Source: Vitrella brassicaformis CCMP3155 (taxonomy: Eukaryota > Protista > Chromerida). Taken from it: a stretch of 28,235 nt of DNA. The stretch covers positions 1-28,235 of the forward strand of contig CDMY01000712.1 of NCBI GenBank assembly GCA_001179505.1, written 5' to 3'. The notes beneath the pieces are model-generated. The model made no database searches and was not told the origin of the DNA. It saw only the letters and a list, made by a program, of their open reading frames with translations. Positions 9,775 through 22,237 of the stretch are shown here, piece by piece. How positions within the stretch are numbered: the first letter of the stretch is position 1; every line of letters starts with the position of its first letter. The position numbers and the translations under genes are program-made.

Positions 9775-12035
9775 TCAGTCCTCGACATCGGCCACCCCCT
9801 CGGCCTGGCGCTCCAACTTTTTCTGCAATACAGTACACAATCGATGTGATGTGATGCGGTGCGATGGAGGCAGGGAGGGGTGGGTGGGTGTGTTGGTTGA
9901 TGCGTGCAGTGAATGGATGACCTTGGTTAGTCCGTAGTATTTCTCCTTCTCCTCTGAGGTCTGGAAGCGCCCGTGGCCGTACTTGGATGACGTGTCGATG
10001 AACTTGATGCCCATGACGTTCGTCTGACCCTCGGCAGTCTCCTTGCGGACCACCTACACACACAGCATACATCCCATCCAGACACACACACACACACACA
10101 CACGTACAGGCATGGATGTCAGGCATCCATCCATCCATCCCTCATTCATTCCCTCATTCAGTTGACGCATTGATGTACCGGCGGGTAGAGAGTCTTCCTG
10201 ACGGTGAGGAGTCGCTTCTTGGGTCCCGGGATGCACCCCTTGAGCATCAACCAATCCTCGTTCACCTCGCCGTAGTGCGGGAAACCACCTAGGGAACAGA
10301 CACACACACAGGCAACACCGGCACATTCACTTCTCTACGGGTCCGTCTGTTGAGAGAATTTCCTTGCTTGGTTCCTGTGCTGGTTGGTTGCCTACCCATG
10401 GGTGTGATGCCCTTCTGTGTGACGTCTGCTTCGGTGGCGGCCGAGTTGTGTGCGTTGGTCTTGAGGCCGACACGGTAGATGCGCTTGTTGATTTCCGTCC
10501 GCTGGTGGTACCCACGCTGGCCGGCACGCGGTACCTGGAACTGCACGCGGGCCGGGTGCCACGCACCGATGCAAGCAACCTGACCAACAAACAAACCAGC
10601 CAATGTAGCGCAACGCACCGTGAGGACCAGATGAACAAGGAAGCTGGGATGGATGGGAAGGGGATGTCTTGGTTACCTTTCGGAGCCCTCTGTGGGTCTT
10701 GCGTGGGAGGCGGGTGACGCCCCAGCGGGTCACCACGCCCTCGTAGCCCTTGCCCTTCGTCACACCTACACAGGAGTTTCATGTGATGTTGTCCATCCAT
10801 TGTCCCGTCTGTGTTGGTCCTGTGAGGGTTGCGTACCGATGATGTCGACCACGTCGTTTTCGTTGAAGACGGCATTCACAGAGATGGTCTGCTCAAACAA
10901 ACTGGTGATGAACTCAACCTAACGCAACGCACACACATCCGCACACAGAGGTATCGGACTCCTGTTGTGTGATGTCCGTCCGCCGAATGCTGGCTGACCT
11001 TGTGTGCAACGTCGCGTCCGCCGTTGACTTGTATCTCCGCGATGTGGGCCTTCTTCTGTCCGGTCTTTGCGAGTCGTGGCTGTGTGTGTACGATGGCGCG
11101 GACGACGGTGCAGTACTGGGCGATGCGCTTGAGCTCGGCGTCCATCTTGTTGTTCTCCTGGTAACGCTTGGCATACTTGGTGTACGCCTTCTGCTTCGAA
11201 CGATACCTAACAACACAACACAACACACACACAATCACACACGTGAGCCAGTGGACGGTCTCTCTGTCTGTCTGTGTGTGCGTGTGGGTGACCAGTTTTT
11301 GTAGAATCGTCGCTTGCACTCCTCCGAGAGGTGTCCTGCCCAGACGGACGTGAGAGCGCGGAGGCCCCTGGGTGTCTCGATGTAGCCCACGAGGCCCACC
11401 ACCACCAGCGGGGGACACTCCACTATCGTCACCGCCTCAACGCACTCCTTCTTGTGCAGCTCTGACATCAAGTCACACGCAGACAGACACGCCAGACATA
11501 CAGATCGATCGACATACCAACCCAACACGCGGAACACCCTGTGTGTGCTGTCTGCCTCTGACTCCCTCCTGGTGCGTGTGTGGTGTCTGTCTGTCTGTCT
11601 GTCTGTCTTTGTGCTGCCCTCCCTCCCGCCTCACTTGATCCGGGTTTTTCGATCTCCCGTACGACGTGTGTCATGCCGGCCTTCCAGCCCATGAAGGCAG
11701 CCAGGTTGGGGGTCTCGCTCGGCTTGTCCTTCTGGTACGCCTTGACTGACACGGTCAACACAATACAGCACACAGGGAACAGAGGCGGGAGGGAAACAAG
11801 GCCACACACAGATGAGCGACGAGGCGAGAAGCCACAGGTGGGCCTGGCTGGGTGTCGTGTGGTTCCCCTCCTCCCCCCTGGTGCCTCTGTGTGCCAGATC
11901 TGCCCGTCCGTGTGCCGTGTGTTGCGCGTTGTGTTGTGCGCGTCACTCACTCCTGCCCCTGGGGTGTCGGCATCTCTTCCGCGGGAGAAATCCCAGCGAC
12001 CCGTGCCGGGGATGCTCGAACTTACGGTGGGACAT
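9775..12035 (-). CDS. RPL3: 60S ribosomal protein L3 (uL3), 10 exons, 405 aa
   Basis: [68 protein letters not shown]. Exons 12035-11951, 11745-11635, 11461-11293, 11206-10999, 10918-10837, 10765-10677, 10579-10396, 10288-10179, 10053-9922 and 9822-9775 sum to 1218 nt. Confidence 0.97.
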
Positions 12036-12155
12036 CCTCTCGACACACAAGCCTCCAACAGCAGGGTTTTCACGGAGCCCTAGTCTCCTGACTGCGAGCT
12101 TAAATGTGCGAGCTTCATCGCAGAAAGTGAGGCACGAAATCGCTTCGACAGCGCG
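12036..12155. promoter_or_regulatory. Putative bidirectional promoter, RPL3 / RPL31 (120 bp)
   Basis: Divergent ATGs 120 bp apart. Direct repeat TGCGAGCTT with cores at 12093-12100 and 12107-12114. Confidence 0.75.
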
Positions 12156-14188: not shown

Positions 14189-16171
14189 TCAGGCTGTTGC
14201 GAGCTCGCCCTTGAGTACGGGAGGGATGTTCGGGCTCTGCTCGCTGCTGAGACCATTCAGCCCTTCCTGCCGCCGATCCTCACTCACGGGGATGAACCTA
14301 CACCAATGTTACGCAAAGAGAGGAAATTGACGTCGCACACATGAACAAGTGAACGGCACATGTGTATGCAGGTGGATATATGTTCAGTGGATGGATGTGC
14401 TGTGGTGTGGTGTGGTGTGTACCTCCAGACGACTGCCAGCGTGGCCCCGGTGACGGCCATCCACACCACAGACACCGCAGGGGGCACACGAACCTGACAC
14501 GACGCGCAGACAGACAGACAGACAGACAGACAGAATGGTGAGAGGGGAGTCAACAGTGTTTTCTCCATCCACGTTGACTGACCGCGAAGTCAGCGAAGTG
14601 CAGCTTGGCAAGGAGGAAGCCGAATGCCGACGACTTCATGGCCGTCTCGATCGCAATGGTCCGCGCCGCAACCTCACCCAAACCCATCGCCTGGCGAACA
14701 CGACATGCACGAGACGACACAATGAATGCATCACGGTCCCGGAGGCCTCTTTGTGTTGGTTCATGCCATCGGTGGCAGTGAGTGTCTGACCTTGGGAATG
14801 AAGAAGCCAAAGAGCCCCCCCAGTAGGTGGAGGAGGATGATGGGTATCTGCAGCTTGATGCCCGCGTCAAGGATAGGCTGGCTGACCTGCGCCACCGACG
14901 ACGCAACCAGCAGACACGTCGATATCACACCCACCAGGGGCGTCACCGGCAGAATCGCCTGGAATGAAACACAGCAACATACGTGCCGTCCGTCCGTCCA
15001 TCCACCCACCCATCCATCCATCCATCCATGCATCCATCCATAAAAATCCACTCACTCATTCAAGCTGGTACCTGTCTGTCTGTCTGTCTGTCTGTCTGTC
15101 TTTGGCTGGCTGTTCCTCAGTTCATTCATGTGACACACTACCTGACTCACCTACCTTGACAGCTTTGTTGAAGAACCTGTTGGCCATCATGCCGACAGCA
15201 ATGGGTCCCAGGACGACTGTCATGGTGCTCTTGACGATGCCGACAGCGTCCAGCGCCACACTGGTGCCCAGCAGGGCCTTGCATAGGAGGGGCGTCGCGA
15301 AGATGGCGCCGATGGTTGTGGCCGTCGTCATCAGCACCGACAGCGCCACGTCGCCCCGGGCAATGTACGTGCACAAATTCGACGCCTGCCCGCCGTTGAT
15401 GCACCCTACCAACACCAGACCTGCCAACCACACAGTCAGCAATGTGCACAAAGACAGCACAGCACCCCTATGTCTACGTGCGTACACATGTACCTGCGGC
15501 AAGTGTCTTGTCGAGTCCCGCGACGGTTCCGAGGAGCTTGGCGAGGTAGGGCATCAGTGCATAGCACCCGACCAGCCCCACACCCACACTCGCCGGCCGC
15601 TTGAGGACCTCGATGAAGTCCTGCGGCGTCAAAGTGATGCCCATCGACAGCATCAGGACGGCCAGCGCACCCGTGAAGTACTCTGTCGTGAACCAGTTGA
15701 ACGACGCGGGGCTCATCAATGCTATGTATGAGAACAGAACGGTCTGCAACAAGCCATCCAGCCAGCCAGGCAGACGAACAAACCAGACAGACAGACAGAC
15801 AGTGCACGCTGCATCGCAACGCCTCGACCTCTCTATGTGTGACTGACCCAAAGGGGGAAGAGGTTCGTCAGCACGTCGCTGATCTTGACGTAGGCCTCAT
15901 ACGCACGACTCCTCTTCGATGCGGCGGCATCCTCGGTTGCTCGCAGAGCACTCGGGTCCCGCTGGACACGCTGCAGACTGCTGACAGATGGACTTGAATG
16001 AGGCCTCATGCGGCGCACTGACCGACGCACTGGCTGCAGGGCGGGCATGACAAATGCCGCATCTTCCATGACGGGCAGGGCTGACGATAGTCGTGGCGGT
16101 CCTGTCGCACAGCATGCTGAAACGAGCGCAACGAAGACAGACACGGCTGTGGCTGCACAGGATGGCTTCAT
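14189..16171 (-). CDS. Bile acid:sodium symporter (BASS/SBF) family transporter, probably plastid-targeted; 7 exons, 431 aa
   Basis: MLSMGITLT, GCINGGQASNLCTYIARGDVALSVLMTT, RTIAIETAMKSS and VPPAVSVVW are BASS motifs. An N-terminal signal-like segment is followed by an S/R-rich extension. Exons 16171-15848, 15743-15494, 15420-15155, 14958-14791, 14690-14583, 14493-14423 and 14297-14189 sum to 1296 nt. Confidence 0.88.
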
Positions 16172-16314
16172 GCTGCACACAGATCCTCTCTCTCACGAAA
16201 AGGGGCGGATCGTCAGGTGTAAGCTCGCATCTCGTCGGCCAGGAAAGGGGAGCAGCCCTCCGTGCGTTGCGCCATCAGCCACACGTCCGACGTGTGGAGC
16301 TCACCCGGAACGCC
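16172..16314. promoter_or_regulatory. Putative bidirectional promoter, BASS / opsin-like gene (143 bp)
   Basis: Divergent ATGs. Contains AGCTCGCA (16222-16229), which is TGCGAGCT on the minus strand. Confidence 0.65.
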
Positions 16315-17944
16315 ATGGACATCAACTCCGTTGACAGCTCCCTCTACGATGACATCAGCCAGACCTCGAGCATCACTCTGGTGAGGGCACTTTTCGAATC
16401 GAACAGATCCATGCACCCGCCCGCGGTGTGTCCATCCATCCATCCATCCATCCATCCATCCATGTTTTGTGATGTCTTTTTTTTTGTGCAGTGGACGACG
16501 TTCGGTGTGTTGTCTGCGTTGGGTCTGTTCATGTGGGTGCGGGCCATCACCGCCACCCAGAAAAGGGCCATCAACTCGGACAACATCTGTATGGCCGTAC
16601 TCCTCACCGGCGCATTCACCTACCTCGGTACCTACTTGATGAAGAGACCAGGGAGGGAGGGAGGGAGGGATGGACAGCACCCAGACAGATGCATCTGTGC
16701 CGCATTGTTCTGGTTGCTGTGCGGATGGTGCAGGTATGAGTTTCGGCGTGGGCAAGGAGTTGTATGCCGACAAGACGGGCGACCACTACCGCGTGACGCT
16801 GCAGCTGCGATACATAGGCCGACTCGTCGGCGGCGCACTGCTCGGATACGCAGTCTCACACCTGGCCAGGTACCATACGGTGAATGAATGGCCACATGGA
16901 TGCGATTCTGTGTTGGTCTGTGTATCTACCGACCTGTGTGTGTGTACGTCAGGGCGACCCGGTACATGCAGCTGGTGCTGATGGTGCTTTGGGGCATCAT
17001 TGTCACCTCACTCCGATACGGTGCGAATGACCTGCCTACCATGCCTACAAAGGACTGCTTAGCATCTGTTCCGCGTGTTTGGGTCCACGTGTACTGTTGC
17101 AGGTCTTCTGGTGGAATGGGATGGCCGCTGGTCGTTCTGGGGCTTCGCTCTGGCCGTCTACGTGGTGTACACCTACCTCCTCACATTCGAAATCGCCCAA
17201 AACGTAGTCGACGCTGAGGTGCAGGTACGCCACACATCGGTGTGTATCCAAACATACATACATAGCACATGGGTGGGATTGGGTGCGGGTGATGGATGTA
17301 CCTGTGTATCCGTTTGTCTGTCTGTCTGTCTGTCAGTGGACGTACAACTTTCTGTCGACGAGCACGAGTGTGTTGATCGGCTTCTACTTTTTGTTCTACG
17401 TCCTGGGGGAGATAATGCAAGTCGTCGACGTGGAAGTCGAAATGTACGTATGGATGGACAATTGTGTGGCAAAGGGAGGGAGGGAGGGAGAAGAATGCCG
17501 TTTGACGCTTCCAAGCGTATGCGGATATATGTGTGTATGTGTGCTCAGCATCGTGCATTGCGTCATGGATTTCCTGCTGCTGGGCTGCCTCCCCACCGCC
17601 ATCACGTTCCTCGAGAACTCCGTCGACGAGGGGCTTTTGCCTTCGGTACGTTATAGGAAACTACCATACACCGATGCATGGTGTTCGACCATGAGTCCTT
17701 TCCTTGTCGATGTGTACCTGGATGAGTGCAGCAAGAGCAGGAGATGAACCTCTACCCAGGTACACAGACAAAGCCAGCAACCAACTACAAGAGGCAAATG
17801 AACAGCTGCAATTCCATCTATCTATCTATCCATCGTGGTGTTGTCTGTGTGTGGTCCATCCCCCTTCCCCTTCATTTTCCTCCCATGTGTGCAGGCCCCC
17901 ACAAGGTCGGTTTCCACCCCAACCCCGAGTACTACGAAAACTAA
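16315..17944 (+). CDS. Microbial (type-1) rhodopsin-fold 7-TM protein lacking the Schiff-base lysine (opsin-related protein); 9 exons, 269 aa
   Basis: Exons 16315-16380, 16492-16627, 16734-16869, 16953-17020, 17103-17224, 17337-17443, 17549-17645, 17732-17759 and 17895-17944 sum to 810 nt. Helix B TYLGMSFGVG, helix C LRYIGRLV, helix E RWSFWGF, helix F VLIGFYFLFYVLGE and helix G EIIVHCVMDFLLLG align by eye to bacteriorhodopsin. Confidence 0.8.
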
Positions 17945-18983
17945 ACATGTCGCGCCAACAATAAAACACACGCATAGCGTGTGTACTGATAGAGATAGCC
18001 TTCCATTCAGCCTGCCTACTTCTTTCCTTGACTTCTTCCCGTGACTTTTTTCTTTTGTATTGGCTGGTCGCACACACACGAAGGGGGTGTTGATTCGATG
18101 GTGCTGCGTGTCCTTGTACGTTCTCGGGTTCTTCAAAGCACACGTCTGGATGGGCTGGGTGGATTGGGTGGCTGGCTGGCTGGCTGTGTGGTAGGGAAGT
18201 GAGTGGAATGCATGAGGTGAATGTTTGGCAGAGAGGGGCTGGCTGGCATCGAATTACGCACCCGTACGTGCAGTGTACAGACAGGCAGACTTCTAGAACA
18301 CCCCGCTGACCGACAAGCGTGTCTGTGTGACGGATCCCCGGAGCTAGACGAACACTGAGCGTTGTCGAACGAATCATTTTCCAAGAATGAGTCCTGAGGA
18401 GGGAATTAAACAAAAGCTATCGCTTCCTCAGAGGCGAGGAAAGGGGAAGATGAGTACATGTACAAATCATGAGCTGATTTGACTCATCGCCTGGTGAGTC
18501 ACACAGCCTGCTGCGGTAGAGAACTGTAGGATTCACTTTCTGACCTCAAACTGCTCACCAAAATAATGAGACAAAGGGAGACAAAGACGACATCGTGGTC
18601 GACAGGTGAGTAAGTGAGAAAACCAGGTAATCAGTCAACCAAGGGCCCAACAATTGCCTTGATGCTGGTCGCCAACTCTGACTAGAGAGACGGAAGCTGC
18701 TATGATTGTCGGATGCCATTGGGATGGATGAAAGAAAGAAGACACATGCTCCCTTCCAAGTCTGCATCATGACCATTACACAGACGACATGACCTGTCTT
18801 CGGGAGGACGCGCGGCATTCGACCCACGCCCCCAAGGGAGAGGACAGGAAAAGCCGACCAGAGAAGGACGAAGAAAGAGGCAGACCCTTGTGGCTGAGTG
18901 GACCGAAACGACACGAGAAATACCGAGCGTCGGACAGGGAGGCAACACACTGAGAGCAGATTCGTCTTCATATCGCCCATGAC

Positions 18984-19367: not shown

Positions 19368-22237
19368 ATGTGGTGGTTCACGAGCACCCCGGCTGCCATG
19401 GCAATTGGCATCGCCCTCTGCCTCTTCGCCTTTTTCACTCGACACACTTTCGCCCAGAAACAGCAGCAGCAGCAGCAGGATAAGTACTTGACCTTCAGGG
19501 AGAGCGGCCTCGCCTACATCCACCCAAGGGAACACGCACAGTGAGCGCCAAACAGAAGAACCGCAAGAGATACTCACACTCACCCCGGCGTTTGCAACTG
19601 ATGCGATGTGGCCTTTGTGTGTGCAGATATGTGTCGCCCTTCACGACCATCGCCCTCCGCCACGGAGAGGTGCTGCTGTCTGATGGCCTGGAGAGCAAGG
19701 TCAAGGTGTCGGCCCGCGACGAGGGGCAAACGGTGCTGTCCTCCGACCAGCGCACCCTCATCTATAAGCCCGCCACACCCAACAAGCCGCTGCCGCGTGG
19801 AGAGCGGGTCACCGTGCTTGTAAAGCCCGGCATCAAGACAGTCAATGGCACCGTGCTGCCAGGTAGATGGACAGGGAGTCCGGCAGGGGGGAAGGGAACG
19901 GGGCAACACGCCAGGCTGGTGCTGTCACTCACTGTGTTGGGCACGTGTGCGTGTGTGTGCGAATGCAGGCGTTAAGTGGTCATTCATTGTGTCGGACCAT
20001 CATGGTGGCTATCCCGGTGCACGCTTATACGCGGGCAACGACTGGGCTCCGATCGAGCCGAAGGCACTCATGAACCAGCCTATACCCCTCAACACTCACG
20101 CGTCAGTCCTCAGTTTTGACCGCCAAGGCCCGCCCCCCAAATTGCCCTTCCCACCTGCCATGGCTGACATGGAGGAGGGGTGGTACCCTTACACGAATAC
20201 ACATACACATACACATCCATTCCCCACACACTCACCCCACCCCCTATCTGTGTCTGTCCCTATGCGTGCGTCTGTGCCGTGTGTGTACGTCAGGTACGAG
20301 GCGCCCTTTAACCACTACAAGACCATCCCCGACCATCTGCCGCGGATGCGGGTGCGGGGGAAGCCCAAGTATGATCAGCTTGCCCCGGGCTACTTCTTCA
20401 TGTCAAACATGTGAGACGGCACAACGGGCGGACAGACAGGGAAACAGCTTTCTTCATGATCTGGCAAGGGTGTGTGTGATGATCGTGGTGGATGTTGCAG
20501 CATTTTCGACACGGAACCCTTTGGCCACGTGTGGCACCCAGCAGTGATGGTTGTGGACAACCATGGTGACCTTGTCTATTACGATGCCAGGGGTGAATGG
20601 AAGAATCAGACTCGAGGGGAGGCGCCGGGCATCATTGAGATATCGCCGATGGGCCGGCTGCTCGTGAAAGAGAACGAGGCAATCACTGAAAAGGACAATG
20701 ACCTCAATTTCGTCAGACGACACCATCCCGAGCACGGTGGGACAGACAGCTTACCTAAGCCGTGCCATTTTCCTCTTTGTCCCCTTTGTCAGGCTACCAG
20801 TTGAATGCACACGACATGCGAATGGACGCAAAGGGGAACCGGCTCTTCACAATCGCGTAACAGAAACAGAGACGATGCTCACGTACACAGCACTCTTCCT
20901 TTCAACATGATGTGGTATGTTATGTCGCAGCGACCCGCAGCCCATCAATGTGAAGGGCATGTGGGAGGGCGCCCCAGACACCGCAGTCAAAATCGTGGGT
21001 GCGGTCGTCCAGGAGGTCGACCATCAGAACAACGTTGTCATGGAATTTCGCTCGTGGGACCACTTCGAGCTGCCCTGGCTCATCAAGCAGTCTGCCATCG
21101 AGTTCAACGCTACGAGCCCGATATGGGACCTGATTCATCAGTAAGTGCTTCGAACCAGCCAGGCAACACACATACTCGTCGTACATTCCCTCATATCCAT
21201 CTCGCGTGTTCCACGCGTGCGTCATTATTGTGCGTTCGAAGAAACTCAGTAGATTTCACGGACGACGACAGCATCGTCATCAGCTGGAGGGGGACCAGCA
21301 GTGTGCTGAAGGTCGACAGGGAGACCGGCGATGTTGTGTGGCGGCTGGGGGGCACCCAGGCCTTCAACCAGTTCAAGCTTACCCAAGACGCCGCTCCCAA
21401 GGGCGGTAAGTTAGTCGCGTGGAAATCAGAGATTGTGTCTGTTTCTAATCCATGTGTGCCTGCGCCATGATGGATGCAGAATCCAAGATGCCATCGTTCA
21501 TCGGGCAGCATGACGCATCGCTCAAGGGCAACAGGCTGACCGTCTTCGATAATGCATTCCTCGACCGTTACGTACCCGGGTGTGTTGGTGGTGTTGCCAG
21601 CTTTGAGACAACGTTCTCGTCACGGGCACTTGAATACAATCTCGATCAGCACTCAATGGTGGCCAAGAGGATCTTCTCCTACAGCGGCCCCAGACGTGCA
21701 GATGGCAGCCTCAAGTACCGCTATGTCTCGCGGTGCCATGGGAGCTTTCAGAAGACCGACAAGGGCACCGGGGTCATCGGCTGGGGGGGGATGCACATCA
21801 CCGGCCACCTGCCTGTTGTCGAGGAGGTCTCTGTCGACGGCGAGCTGCTGCTATCGTTCGACTGGATGAGCGGCGCCAACTCGTACAGGGCGAGGAAATA
21901 CGGGTGGCGGAACGTCACACCGCACTGGCGCCCGACGCTGCTGCTCATCGACCAGGTGCTCTACTACAGCTGGAACGGCTCCACCGACGTGGCTGCGTGG
22001 CGCATCGAGGCGGCAGAGGGGCCCGGCAAGCCATTCACCCGAGTGACGAAACACAAGCGGACCAGATTCGAGCACTCGGTCGCTCTGACCAAGACGGCCT
22101 TGACGCCTGGCGGCCGTTGCATGGTGTACCGGGCGATTGCCATGGGGAAGGACGGCAAGCAGCTCGGGGCGAGCGATGGTGTGCACACAGCCGAGTGCGG
22201 TGACACCGGTGGCAAGAAGGGCACCGTGCGAGCCTAA
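19368..22237 (+). CDS. Secreted arylsulfotransferase (ASST / Arylsulfotran_2-like beta-propeller) with an N-terminal bacterial Ig-like domain, copy 1; 9 exons, ~720 aa
   Basis: Signal peptide plus polyQ; Ig-like segment SDQRTLIYKP...LPRGERVTVLVKPGIKTVNG; ASST motifs HDMR, DLIHQNSV, ISWR, KVDRETGDVVWRLGG, QHDA..LTVFDN, SYRARKY.W and YYSWNGSTDV..W. Exons 19368-19540, 19627-19862, 19969-20182, 20294-20410, 20501-20736, 20793-20856, 20931-21140, 21242-21405 and 21480-22237 sum to 2172 nt. The start could instead be the ATG at 19398. Confidence 0.85.

What the first reader, a model, noticed from the sequence alone, without database searches (positions are those of the whole stretch)
16315..17944. 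Microbial rhodopsin-fold protein with the retinal lysine replaced by Leu and a remodelled pocket
Seen: helix G E-I-I-V-H-C-V-M-D-F-L-L-L-G has the same spacing as bacteriorhodopsin E204...D212...K216, so the K216 position is Leu (CTG, 17580-17582). In helix C, R82 and Y83 are kept but D85>G, W86>R, T89>G, P91>A and D96>A. In helix F, W182>I, P186>F and W189>Y. It cannot form the canonical Schiff base, yet the 9-exon ORF is intact. Known: Lys-less opsin-related proteins occur in fungi (Hsp30/Yro2), haloarchaea and cryptophytes, with poorly defined roles. Inference: a light-independent sensor, channel or chaperone. An Arg projecting into the former retinal pocket suggests an anionic ligand or ion path.
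Basis: partly seen in the sequence, partly recalled or inferred. Interest (0 to 1): 0.8.

Follow-up and report, generated by a model that had tools for sequence, protein, structure and literature searches.

The report
Lysine-less rhodopsin-fold protein of Vitrella
This expressed gene of the alga Vitrella brassicaformis encodes a protein with the bacteriorhodopsin fold that cannot attach retinal in the usual way. It belongs to a small, apparently undescribed family shared with Symbiodinium dinoflagellates, whose best-conserved parts face the cytoplasm.

Summary
The nine GT-AG exons (16315-17944, +) give a 269-aa protein identical to a database record from Vitrella brassicaformis. Spliced transcript contigs from four runs (three studies) remove all eight introns exactly as modelled. 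They carry the helix-G exon with Leu (CTG 17580-17582) where rhodopsins have the retinal lysine.

Rhodopsin homology is solid. A family profile hits only microbial rhodopsins in the PDB (best E 1.4e-12). The AlphaFold model superposes on bacteriorhodopsin (TM 0.90, 1.6 A) and includes the B-C beta-hairpin.

HMMER against 1.84 billion representatives found only 10 relatives. The named sources are Vitrella and Symbiodinium. Every full-length member lacks the lysine, so the loss is old and not a private mutation.

- Changed positions: Arg at the W86 position and Trp at the D115 position are invariant; W182 and W189 are lost.
- Kept positions: the equivalents of Y57, Y185, E204 and D212.
- Most conserved parts: the cytoplasmic C-D loop and a 29-residue Tyr/Pro-rich C-terminal tail.
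- Selection: dN/dS is 0.135 for one dinoflagellate pair.

It is a new family within the known lysine-less (Rh-noK) class. It is most likely retinal-free and acts through its cytoplasmic face. The function is inferred, not shown.

The parts
16222..16229 (-). TGCGAGCT octamer, 10-40 nt upstream of the 5' ends of the transcript contigs; candidate promoter element of the divergent promoter
   Evidence: 6 copies in the window against 1.13 expected.: contig 5' ends at 16239-16263.
16239..16314 (+). 5' UTR (the contigs start at 16239-16263)
   Evidence: table 8
16315..16380 (+). exon 1, residues 1-22, extracellular N-terminus
   Evidence: joint 16379/16491, GT..AG
16492..16627 (+). exon 2, helices A and B; Y66 (16621-16623) is the BR Y57 equivalent, invariant in the family
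16734..16869 (+). exon 3, B-C beta-hairpin and helix C; R93 (16808-16810) is the R82 position; R97 (16820-16822) is the W86 position and is Arg in 11 of 11 members
16953..17020 (+). exon 4, C-D loop and helix D; W126 (16990-16992) is the BR D115 position and is Trp in 11 of 11 members
17103..17224 (+). exon 5, helix E; R144 is the BR R134 equivalent
17337..17443 (+). exon 6, helix F (I190, Y193, F194, Y197 at BR positions 182, 185, 186, 189) and the start of helix G; E211 (17439-17441) is the E204 equivalent
17549..17645 (+). exon 7, helix G; D219 (17568-17570) is the D212 equivalent; L223 (17580-17582) is at the K216 position; the conserved tail starts at L241 (17634)
   Evidence: (joint 17443/17549)
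17732..17759 (+). exon 8, middle of the tail (QEQEMNLYPG)
17895..17944 (+). exon 9, end of the tail (PHKVGFHPNPEYYEN) and the TAA stop
17945..18200 (+). 3' UTR; the contigs run a further 165-199 nt past 18200
   Evidence: table 8

Best explanation
SHOWN. The gene encodes an expressed 269-aa, seven-helix protein with the microbial (type-1) rhodopsin fold. It belongs to a small conserved family known by name only from the chromerid Vitrella and from Symbiodinium dinoflagellates. Every full-length member examined lacks the Schiff-base lysine, which is replaced by L, I, V or T.

INFERRED. The family works without retinal and without light.
- The retinal cavity is occupied by the protein's own side chains. 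Arg is invariant at the W86 position and Trp at the D115 position, while the aromatic walls W182 and W189 are gone.
- The Arg probably pairs with the invariant D212 equivalent, which keeps its two tyrosine hydrogen-bond donors (the Y57 and Y185 equivalents). This would replace the charge pair that the protonated Schiff base normally forms.
- The protein then acts as a membrane scaffold, receptor or regulator. Its output or regulation would run through the conserved cytoplasmic face: the A-R-E-R-R loop after helix C, the E-F loop, and the disordered Tyr/Pro-rich C-terminal tail, which would dock a cytosolic partner. This resembles the fungal lysine-less opsin-related proteins, reported to regulate the plasma-membrane H+-ATPase.
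For: Fold and homology:
- (see the observation check).
- in the ESM Atlas, 29 of 30 feature neighbours carry PF01036. The best are the fungal FDD123 and Hsp30 clusters (0.94, 0.93). Structural TM is 0.84.
- family members P0004 and P0002 score 33.4 and 23.7 bits on PF01036 (cut-off 24.6).
- the model has seven helices plus the B-C hairpin, mean pLDDT 77.

Expression and model: one search shows one fully spliced contig in each of four runs (three studies), with no sequence differences.

Family and conservation:
- only 10 relatives at E<=1e-10 among 1.84 billion representatives.
- the K216 column is never K. R97, W126, Y66, E211, D219 and R144 are each 11 of 11.
- mean majority fraction is 0.93 for the C-D loop and 0.82 for the tail, against 0.49-0.66 for the helices.
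- Vitrella against the other members is 20-28% identical in the membrane part but 52-66% in the tail.
- dN/dS is 0.135.

Precedents in the literature:
- Bulky residues block the pocket of flotillin-associated rhodopsins (bioRxiv 10.1101/2025.04.29.651185).
- Yeast opsin-related proteins are reported to regulate the H+-ATPase (PMC7714340).
- Y57 and Y185 donate hydrogen bonds to D212, and W86 belongs to the same active-centre cluster (PMC10722396).
Against: - No functional data exist for any member.
- I could not read model coordinates, so the Arg97-Asp219 contact and the pocket filling by Trp126 follow from position equivalence with BR, not from measured distances.
- The tail matches no known motif. 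N-P-x-Y/F is present in only 7 of 11 members, and the Atlas search of the tail gave nothing.
- The conserved E204, D212 and Arg positions are also the residues of an extracellular ion pathway, so a transport role is not excluded.
- Membrane orientation is assumed from homology. The positive-inside count in the Vitrella protein is weak (6 against 4).
Confidence: 0.55

Rival explanations
1. A light-independent ion pathway or lipid scramblase. The retained polar chain on the extracellular half (R93/R97, D219, E211, E201) would conduct or sense protons or anions passively, or oligomers would scramble lipids. The tail would serve only for trafficking.
For: - E204 and D212 equivalents are 11 of 11, Arg is invariant, and the D85 position is mostly Gly, which would leave room for an anion as in chloride pumps.
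- Light-independent scramblase activity has been reported for a proteorhodopsin (PMC10730872, listed).
Against: - The cytoplasmic half has no carboxylate at the D96 position (N or A), so no continuous polar path is evident.
- The R82 position is not conserved (2 of 11).
- Conservation peaks on the cytoplasmic loops and tail rather than along a pore.
Confidence: 0.2
2. A silent partner subunit. It would co-assemble with the true retinal-binding rhodopsins of the same cell (Vitrella has channelrhodopsins and bestrhodopsin-like genes) and tune their activity or targeting.
For: - Vitrella makes functional rhodopsins (PMC10147648; earlier notes of this scan).
- The same idea has been proposed for bacterial Rh-noK genes that sit next to proteorhodopsin.
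- The rhodopsin fold, and with it its oligomer interfaces, is kept.
Against: - There is no genomic linkage here. The neighbours are an SBF transporter and unrelated genes.
- The family is only 20-23% identical to any Lys-bearing rhodopsin, and the nearest one scores only E 1.5e-4.
- Nothing was tested about oligomers.
Confidence: 0.12
3. Still a photoreceptor. It would bind retinal or another chromophore non-covalently, or through a residue other than the canonical lysine.
For: - The Y83, Y185 and D212 equivalents are kept.
- The dinoflagellate members have conserved cysteines in helices F and G.
- Retinal is available in the organism.
Against: - There is no Lys in any helix core.
- W86, W182 and W189 are all lost, and a charged Arg and a Trp are placed into the cavity in all members.
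- The conserved cysteines are absent from the Vitrella protein.
Confidence: 0.08
4. A decaying relic with no function, or a member of an unrelated 7-TM family. One source's name, cut off in the table as 'Intimal thickness related rec...', looks like the intimal-thickness-related-receptor (GPR180) type.
For: - Pfam finds nothing in the Vitrella protein itself, even at E<=10.
- The Vitrella sequence sits on a long branch.
Against: - It is spliced and expressed.
- The family is conserved between Vitrella and Symbiodinium, with dN/dS 0.135 in one pair.
- All sequence and fold matches are to microbial rhodopsins, and no family other than PF01036 fits.
Confidence: 0.03

Closest known systems
Fungal opsin-related proteins (Hsp30, Yro2/Mrh1, FDD123)
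   Same: - Eukaryotic, with the rhodopsin fold and no retinal lysine; believed to be light-independent membrane regulators.
- They are the nearest neighbours by language-model features (0.93-0.94) and by structure (TM 0.84) in the ESM Atlas.
   Different: - No fungal protein appeared in the exhaustive HMMER search at E<=1e-3, so there is no sign of a shared Lys-less ancestor.
- The invariant Arg (W86 position), the invariant Trp (D115 position) and the conserved tail of this family were not compared with the fungal proteins, because no fungal sequence could be fetched here.
Rh-noK class (lysine-less microbial rhodopsin homologues, e.g. nine of the 42 Guillardia theta genes; betaproteobacterial Rh-noK)
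   Same: - Rhodopsin homology with a missing Schiff-base lysine.
- Expressed in native cells, function unknown (PMC7714340).
   Different: [quoted passage not shown] Here the whole pocket is rebuilt, in every member.
- This is a separate, small family with its own signature residues.
Flotillin-associated rhodopsins (FArhodopsins)
   Same: - Rhodopsin fold without retinal, because bulky polar side chains fill the pocket.
- The inferred role of Arg97 and Trp126 here is analogous.
   Different: - FArhodopsins are bacterial proteorhodopsin paralogues, and many keep the lysine.
- The blocking positions differ (H84/E120 there).
- They have no comparable cytoplasmic tail.
Bacteriorhodopsin/archaerhodopsin and the fungal proton pump LR (Mac, 7bmh)
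   Same: - Best fold and profile matches: TM 0.90, rmsd 1.6 A; E 1.4e-12.
- The B-C hairpin and the Y57, Y83, R134, Y185, E204 and D212 equivalents are kept.
   Different: - No K216.
- No D85, D96, W86, W182, P186 or W189.
- It therefore cannot be a retinal-based pump.

Membership tests
Microbial (type-1) rhodopsin superfamily, PF01036 Bac_rhodopsin | Seven-helix fold with the B-C beta-hairpin, superposable on bacteriorhodopsin | tested here: met
   - seven helices plus the hairpin at residues 75-90.
- TM 0.90, rmsd 1.6 A.
- TM 0.84 and 0.75.
Microbial (type-1) rhodopsin superfamily, PF01036 Bac_rhodopsin | Significant sequence similarity to the family | tested here: met
   - The window protein alone gives no Pfam hit and E 0.015 against archaerhodopsin-2.
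- Relative P0004 scores 33.4 bits, above the 24.6 cut-off.
- The family profile gives 1.4e-12, with only rhodopsins hit.
Microbial (type-1) rhodopsin superfamily, PF01036 Bac_rhodopsin | Retinal-binding lysine in helix G (the DxxxK motif) | tested here: not met
   D219-F-L-L-L223. The column is L, T, I or V in all 11 non-redundant members. The RNA confirms the exon.
Microbial (type-1) rhodopsin superfamily, PF01036 Bac_rhodopsin | Aromatic retinal pocket (W86, W182, Y185, W189) | tested here: not met
   R, I/G/C, Y/F and Y/F respectively; only Y185 is kept.
Microbial (type-1) rhodopsin superfamily, PF01036 Bac_rhodopsin | Binds retinal and absorbs visible light | not testable with these tools
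   Needs expression and spectroscopy.
Rh-noK (lysine-less rhodopsin homologues) | Rhodopsin homology combined with absence of the helix-G lysine | tested here: met
   The class is described in PMC7714340 and in bioRxiv 10.1101/2025.04.29.651185.
Fungal opsin-related proteins (Hsp30/Yro2/Mrh1) | Clusters with the fungal proteins by sequence | tested here: inconclusive
   - No fungal hit at E<=1e-3 in the exhaustive search.
- Only language-model and fold similarity.
- No tree including fungal sequences could be built.
GPR180 / intimal-thickness-related receptor type 7-TM domain (suggested by a source's truncated name for the record) | Match to that Pfam domain | tested here: not met
   No Pfam family of any kind at E<=10 in P0001. 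Relatives match only PF01036 with any strength.

The most novel reading that the evidence does not exclude
The family would be a retinal-independent seven-helix receptor or regulator specific to chromerids and dinoflagellates. An invariant Arg-Asp pair would stand in for the protonated Schiff base and its counter-ion, and an invariant Trp would stand in for the ionone ring. Changes in that buried charge cluster (protonation or ion binding from outside) would be relayed to a nearly invariant cytoplasmic docking tail. This would be a light sensor turned chemical sensor, kept since before the split of Vitrella and Symbiodinium.
Probability: 0.3. Interest if true: 0.7.

Novelty: new variant of a known kind. 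Interest (0 to 1): 0.45.

Why it matters
- About a tenth of catalogued microbial-rhodopsin homologues lack the retinal lysine (PMC7714340), and their function is essentially unknown.
- Published rhodopsin surveys often keep only sequences with that lysine (PMC9601134), so families like this one are filtered out. I found no paper describing it.
- The family gives unusually clear handles for experiments. It is small and has invariant pocket-filling residues that can be reverted. Its nearly invariant cytoplasmic tail can be used as bait to find partners.
- It occurs in Symbiodiniaceae, the coral symbionts, and in a coral-associated relative of apicomplexan parasites. A conserved membrane receptor or regulator there would have biological interest beyond photobiology.

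Tried and rejected
- **Pfam exon by exon and on two in-frame exon-intron stretches:** nothing. The pieces are too short.
- **Pfam on the whole protein P0001 at E<=10:** nothing. Homology showed only through relatives and the family profile.
- **Word-based protein search with P0001:** only itself.
- **The same search with the family alignment:** a few more Symbiodinium and transcriptome members, and no outside family.
- **The source name pointing to a GPR180-type receptor:** rejected.
- **Atlas search with the tail alone:** no usable hit.
- **Dinoflagellate spliced leader on the transcript contigs L001, L003 and L004:** not found, so the organisms behind these contigs remain unnamed.
- **Shared intron positions with the Symbiodinium natans gene (L002):** three of the eight Vitrella sites lie within one codon of an S. 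natans intron (at G68, Q176/W177 and E211/I212). About 1.3 are expected by chance (my binomial estimate, p about 0.12), so this is inconclusive.
- **Tree:** Vitrella lies outside a 100/99 core clade but on a long branch next to the outgroup, so its exact place is unsure.
- **Joints 17331-17338 to 18165-18171:** these have sides of only 18-22 nt and lie in GTCT and GGCT microsatellites. I take them for repeat artefacts from other transcripts.
- **P0008 and P0019:** mis-modelled or fragmentary Symbiodinium gene models, left out of the conservation counts. The duplicates P0012 and P0014 were also left out.
- **My own joined exon model:** never sent to a search tool. Whole-protein searches used the identical database record P0001, which was found with a by-reference search of a window ORF.

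Full report
**Gene model and expression**

The region holds nine exons on the + strand, with eight GT..AG introns of 82-135 nt. The 810-nt CDS translates to 269 residues. A by-reference search with a window ORF covering exons 1-2 returned the database protein P0001, an 'unnamed protein product' of Vitrella brassicaformis CCMP3155. P0001 is identical to my spliced translation.

I laid contigs from four public runs (three studies) on 16100-18200. Each run gave one contig of 1251-1340 nt in which all eight introns are removed exactly at the modelled sites, with no sequence differences. The 5' ends lie at 16239-16263, and the 3' UTR runs past 18200. No alternative helix-G exon appears.

**Is it a rhodopsin fold?**

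- Pfam finds nothing in single exons or in the whole protein.
- phmmer against all PDB chains returns only archaerhodopsin-2 (E 0.015), aligned in register from residue 14 to 220.
- The ESM Atlas places it among fungal lysine-less opsin-related clusters: FDD123 at 0.94 and Hsp30 at 0.93. Of its 30 feature neighbours, 29 carry PF01036. Its stored model matches a fungal Bac_rhodopsin cluster at TM 0.84 and haloarchaeal bacteriorhodopsin at 0.75/0.81.
- HMMER against 1.84 billion representatives found just 10 relatives at E<=1e-10, plus one true rhodopsin, P0011, at 1.5e-4.
- Two relatives hit PF01036 directly: P0004 at 33.4 bits, above the cut-off, and P0002 at 23.7 bits.
- A profile of the family hits 38 PDB sequences, all microbial rhodopsins. 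The best are LR/Mac 7bmh at 1.4e-12, then a BR-II-like protein, RxR, cyanorhodopsin-II, BR and CsR.
- An AlphaFold model built on the family alignment has mean pLDDT 77, seven helices and the B-C beta-hairpin. It superposes on bacteriorhodopsin with TM 0.90 and rmsd 1.6 A over 223 columns.

The fold and the homology are established.

**The pocket**

All alignments agree on the equivalences. The table covers 11 non-redundant members.

| BR position | Residue in the family | Conservation |
|---|---|---|
| K216 | L, T, I or V | never K |
| W86 | Arg (R97) | 11/11 |
| D115 | Trp (W126) | 11/11 |
| W182 | G, C or I | lost |
| W189 | F or Y | lost |
| P186 | variable | lost |
| D85 | G, E or L | lost |
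| D96 | N or A | lost |
| R82 | Arg | 2/11 |
| Y57 | Tyr (Y66) | 11/11 |
| Y185 | Y or F | kept |
| E204 | Glu (E211) | 11/11 |
| D212 | Asp (D219) | 11/11 |
| R134 | Arg (R144) | 11/11 |

The Vitrella protein has no lysine in the core of any helix. P0011, the nearest Lys-bearing rhodopsin, has D-I-F-S-K in helix G and R-Y-V-E-W in helix C. This shows what the family changed.

In BR, Y57 and Y185 donate hydrogen bonds to D212, and W86 belongs to the same active-centre cluster (PMC10722396). I therefore infer a buried Arg97-Asp219 pair, held by the two tyrosines, in place of the Schiff base and counter-ion pair. I also infer that Trp126 fills the ionone-ring end of the cavity. This is inference from position, because I could not read model coordinates. 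The precedent is the flotillin-associated rhodopsins, where two bulky residues block the pocket.

**The family**

Named sources are Vitrella, Symbiodinium sp. CCMP2456 and S. natans. The rest are EukProt, MMETSP, Logan and JGI transcript contigs without organism names.

- Members are 42-53% identical to one another and 22-32% identical to Vitrella.
- Vitrella lies outside a strongly supported core clade, on a long branch.
- Since every full-length member lacks the lysine, parsimony puts the loss at the base of the family. No fungal protein came up in the exhaustive search. This argues for a loss independent of the fungal opsin-related proteins, but it was not tested with a tree.
- dN/dS between two dinoflagellate members is 0.135, with dS 0.79.

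**Where conservation sits**

Mean majority fraction is 0.93 for the loop after helix C (A-R-E-R-R; A-R-A-T-R in Vitrella) and 0.82 for the last 29 residues. The helices score 0.49-0.66. Vitrella shares 52-66% of tail residues with the other members but only 20-28% of the membrane part.

The tail has the form L-L-P-x-Q-E ... L-Y-P-G-P-H ... G-F-x-P-N. The model predicts it to be disordered, and it matches no known motif. By homology with rhodopsin topology, the C-D loop, the E-F loop and the tail are all cytoplasmic. That points to a conserved partner-binding face.

**Context**

- The upstream neighbour, on the - strand, is a sodium/bile-acid symporter family gene. I found no functional link to it.
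- Vitrella also has true retinal rhodopsins (PMC10147648; earlier notes of this scan).

**What is known**

Lysine-less homologues (Rh-noK) make up about 600 of 5,558 catalogued rhodopsin genes. They are expressed in Guillardia, and in yeast they are reported to regulate the H+-ATPase (PMC7714340). Surveys that require the lysine exclude such proteins (PMC9601134). I found no description of this family in the paper library.

**Verdict**

The protein is a new, conserved family within a known class. The retinal-free, tail-mediated mechanism is the best-supported reading, but it remains untested.

Exons were searched by reference. My own joined model was used only inside scripts, for translation and for comparison with P0001. 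It was never sent to a search tool.

Noticed in passing
window 16222-16229 (- strand); also 109, 3375, 12093, 12107, 14198 (+): The octamer TGCGAGCT occurs 6 times in the window against 1.13 expected (0 of 100 shuffles reach 6). One copy lies 10-40 nt upstream of the 5' ends of this gene's transcript contigs, in the divergent promoter shared with the SBF transporter gene.
   Followed up: partly
window 15474-15848 (- strand): The upstream, divergently oriented neighbour has an exon matching the sodium/bile-acid symporter family (PF01758, E 3e-9).
   Followed up: partly
window 16381-16491 and 17444-17548: Introns 1 and 6 are 111 and 105 nt long, multiples of three, and have no in-frame stop. Their retention would insert 37 or 35 residues without breaking the frame. 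The contigs showed no retained form.
   Followed up: partly
window 16423-16471, 16643-16680, 17313-17336, 17471-17498, 18150-18190: Introns and the 3' UTR carry tetranucleotide microsatellites (CCAT, GGGA, GTCT, GGCT). These attract pieces of unrelated transcripts in read laying and produce false long joints (17331-17338 to 18165-18171).
   Followed up: partly
window 10876-12070 (- strand) and 20805-21467 (+): There are exons of a ribosomal protein L3 gene (PF00297) and, downstream, of an arylsulfotransferase (PF05935/PF14269).
   Followed up: no
P0008 (Symbiodinium sp. CCMP2456) and P0019: The public gene models for family members in Symbiodinium look mis-predicted. P0008 has about 60 extra residues inside helix C and lacks the N-terminus. 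P0019 is a fragment mixing two conserved pieces with unrelated sequence.
   Followed up: partly
P0011 / L005:32-1360: The nearest Lys-bearing rhodopsin is a 442-aa protein from an unnamed transcript contig. It has a roughly 180-residue N-terminal extension, and helix-C residues E, T and N at BR positions 85, 89 and 96.
   Followed up: no
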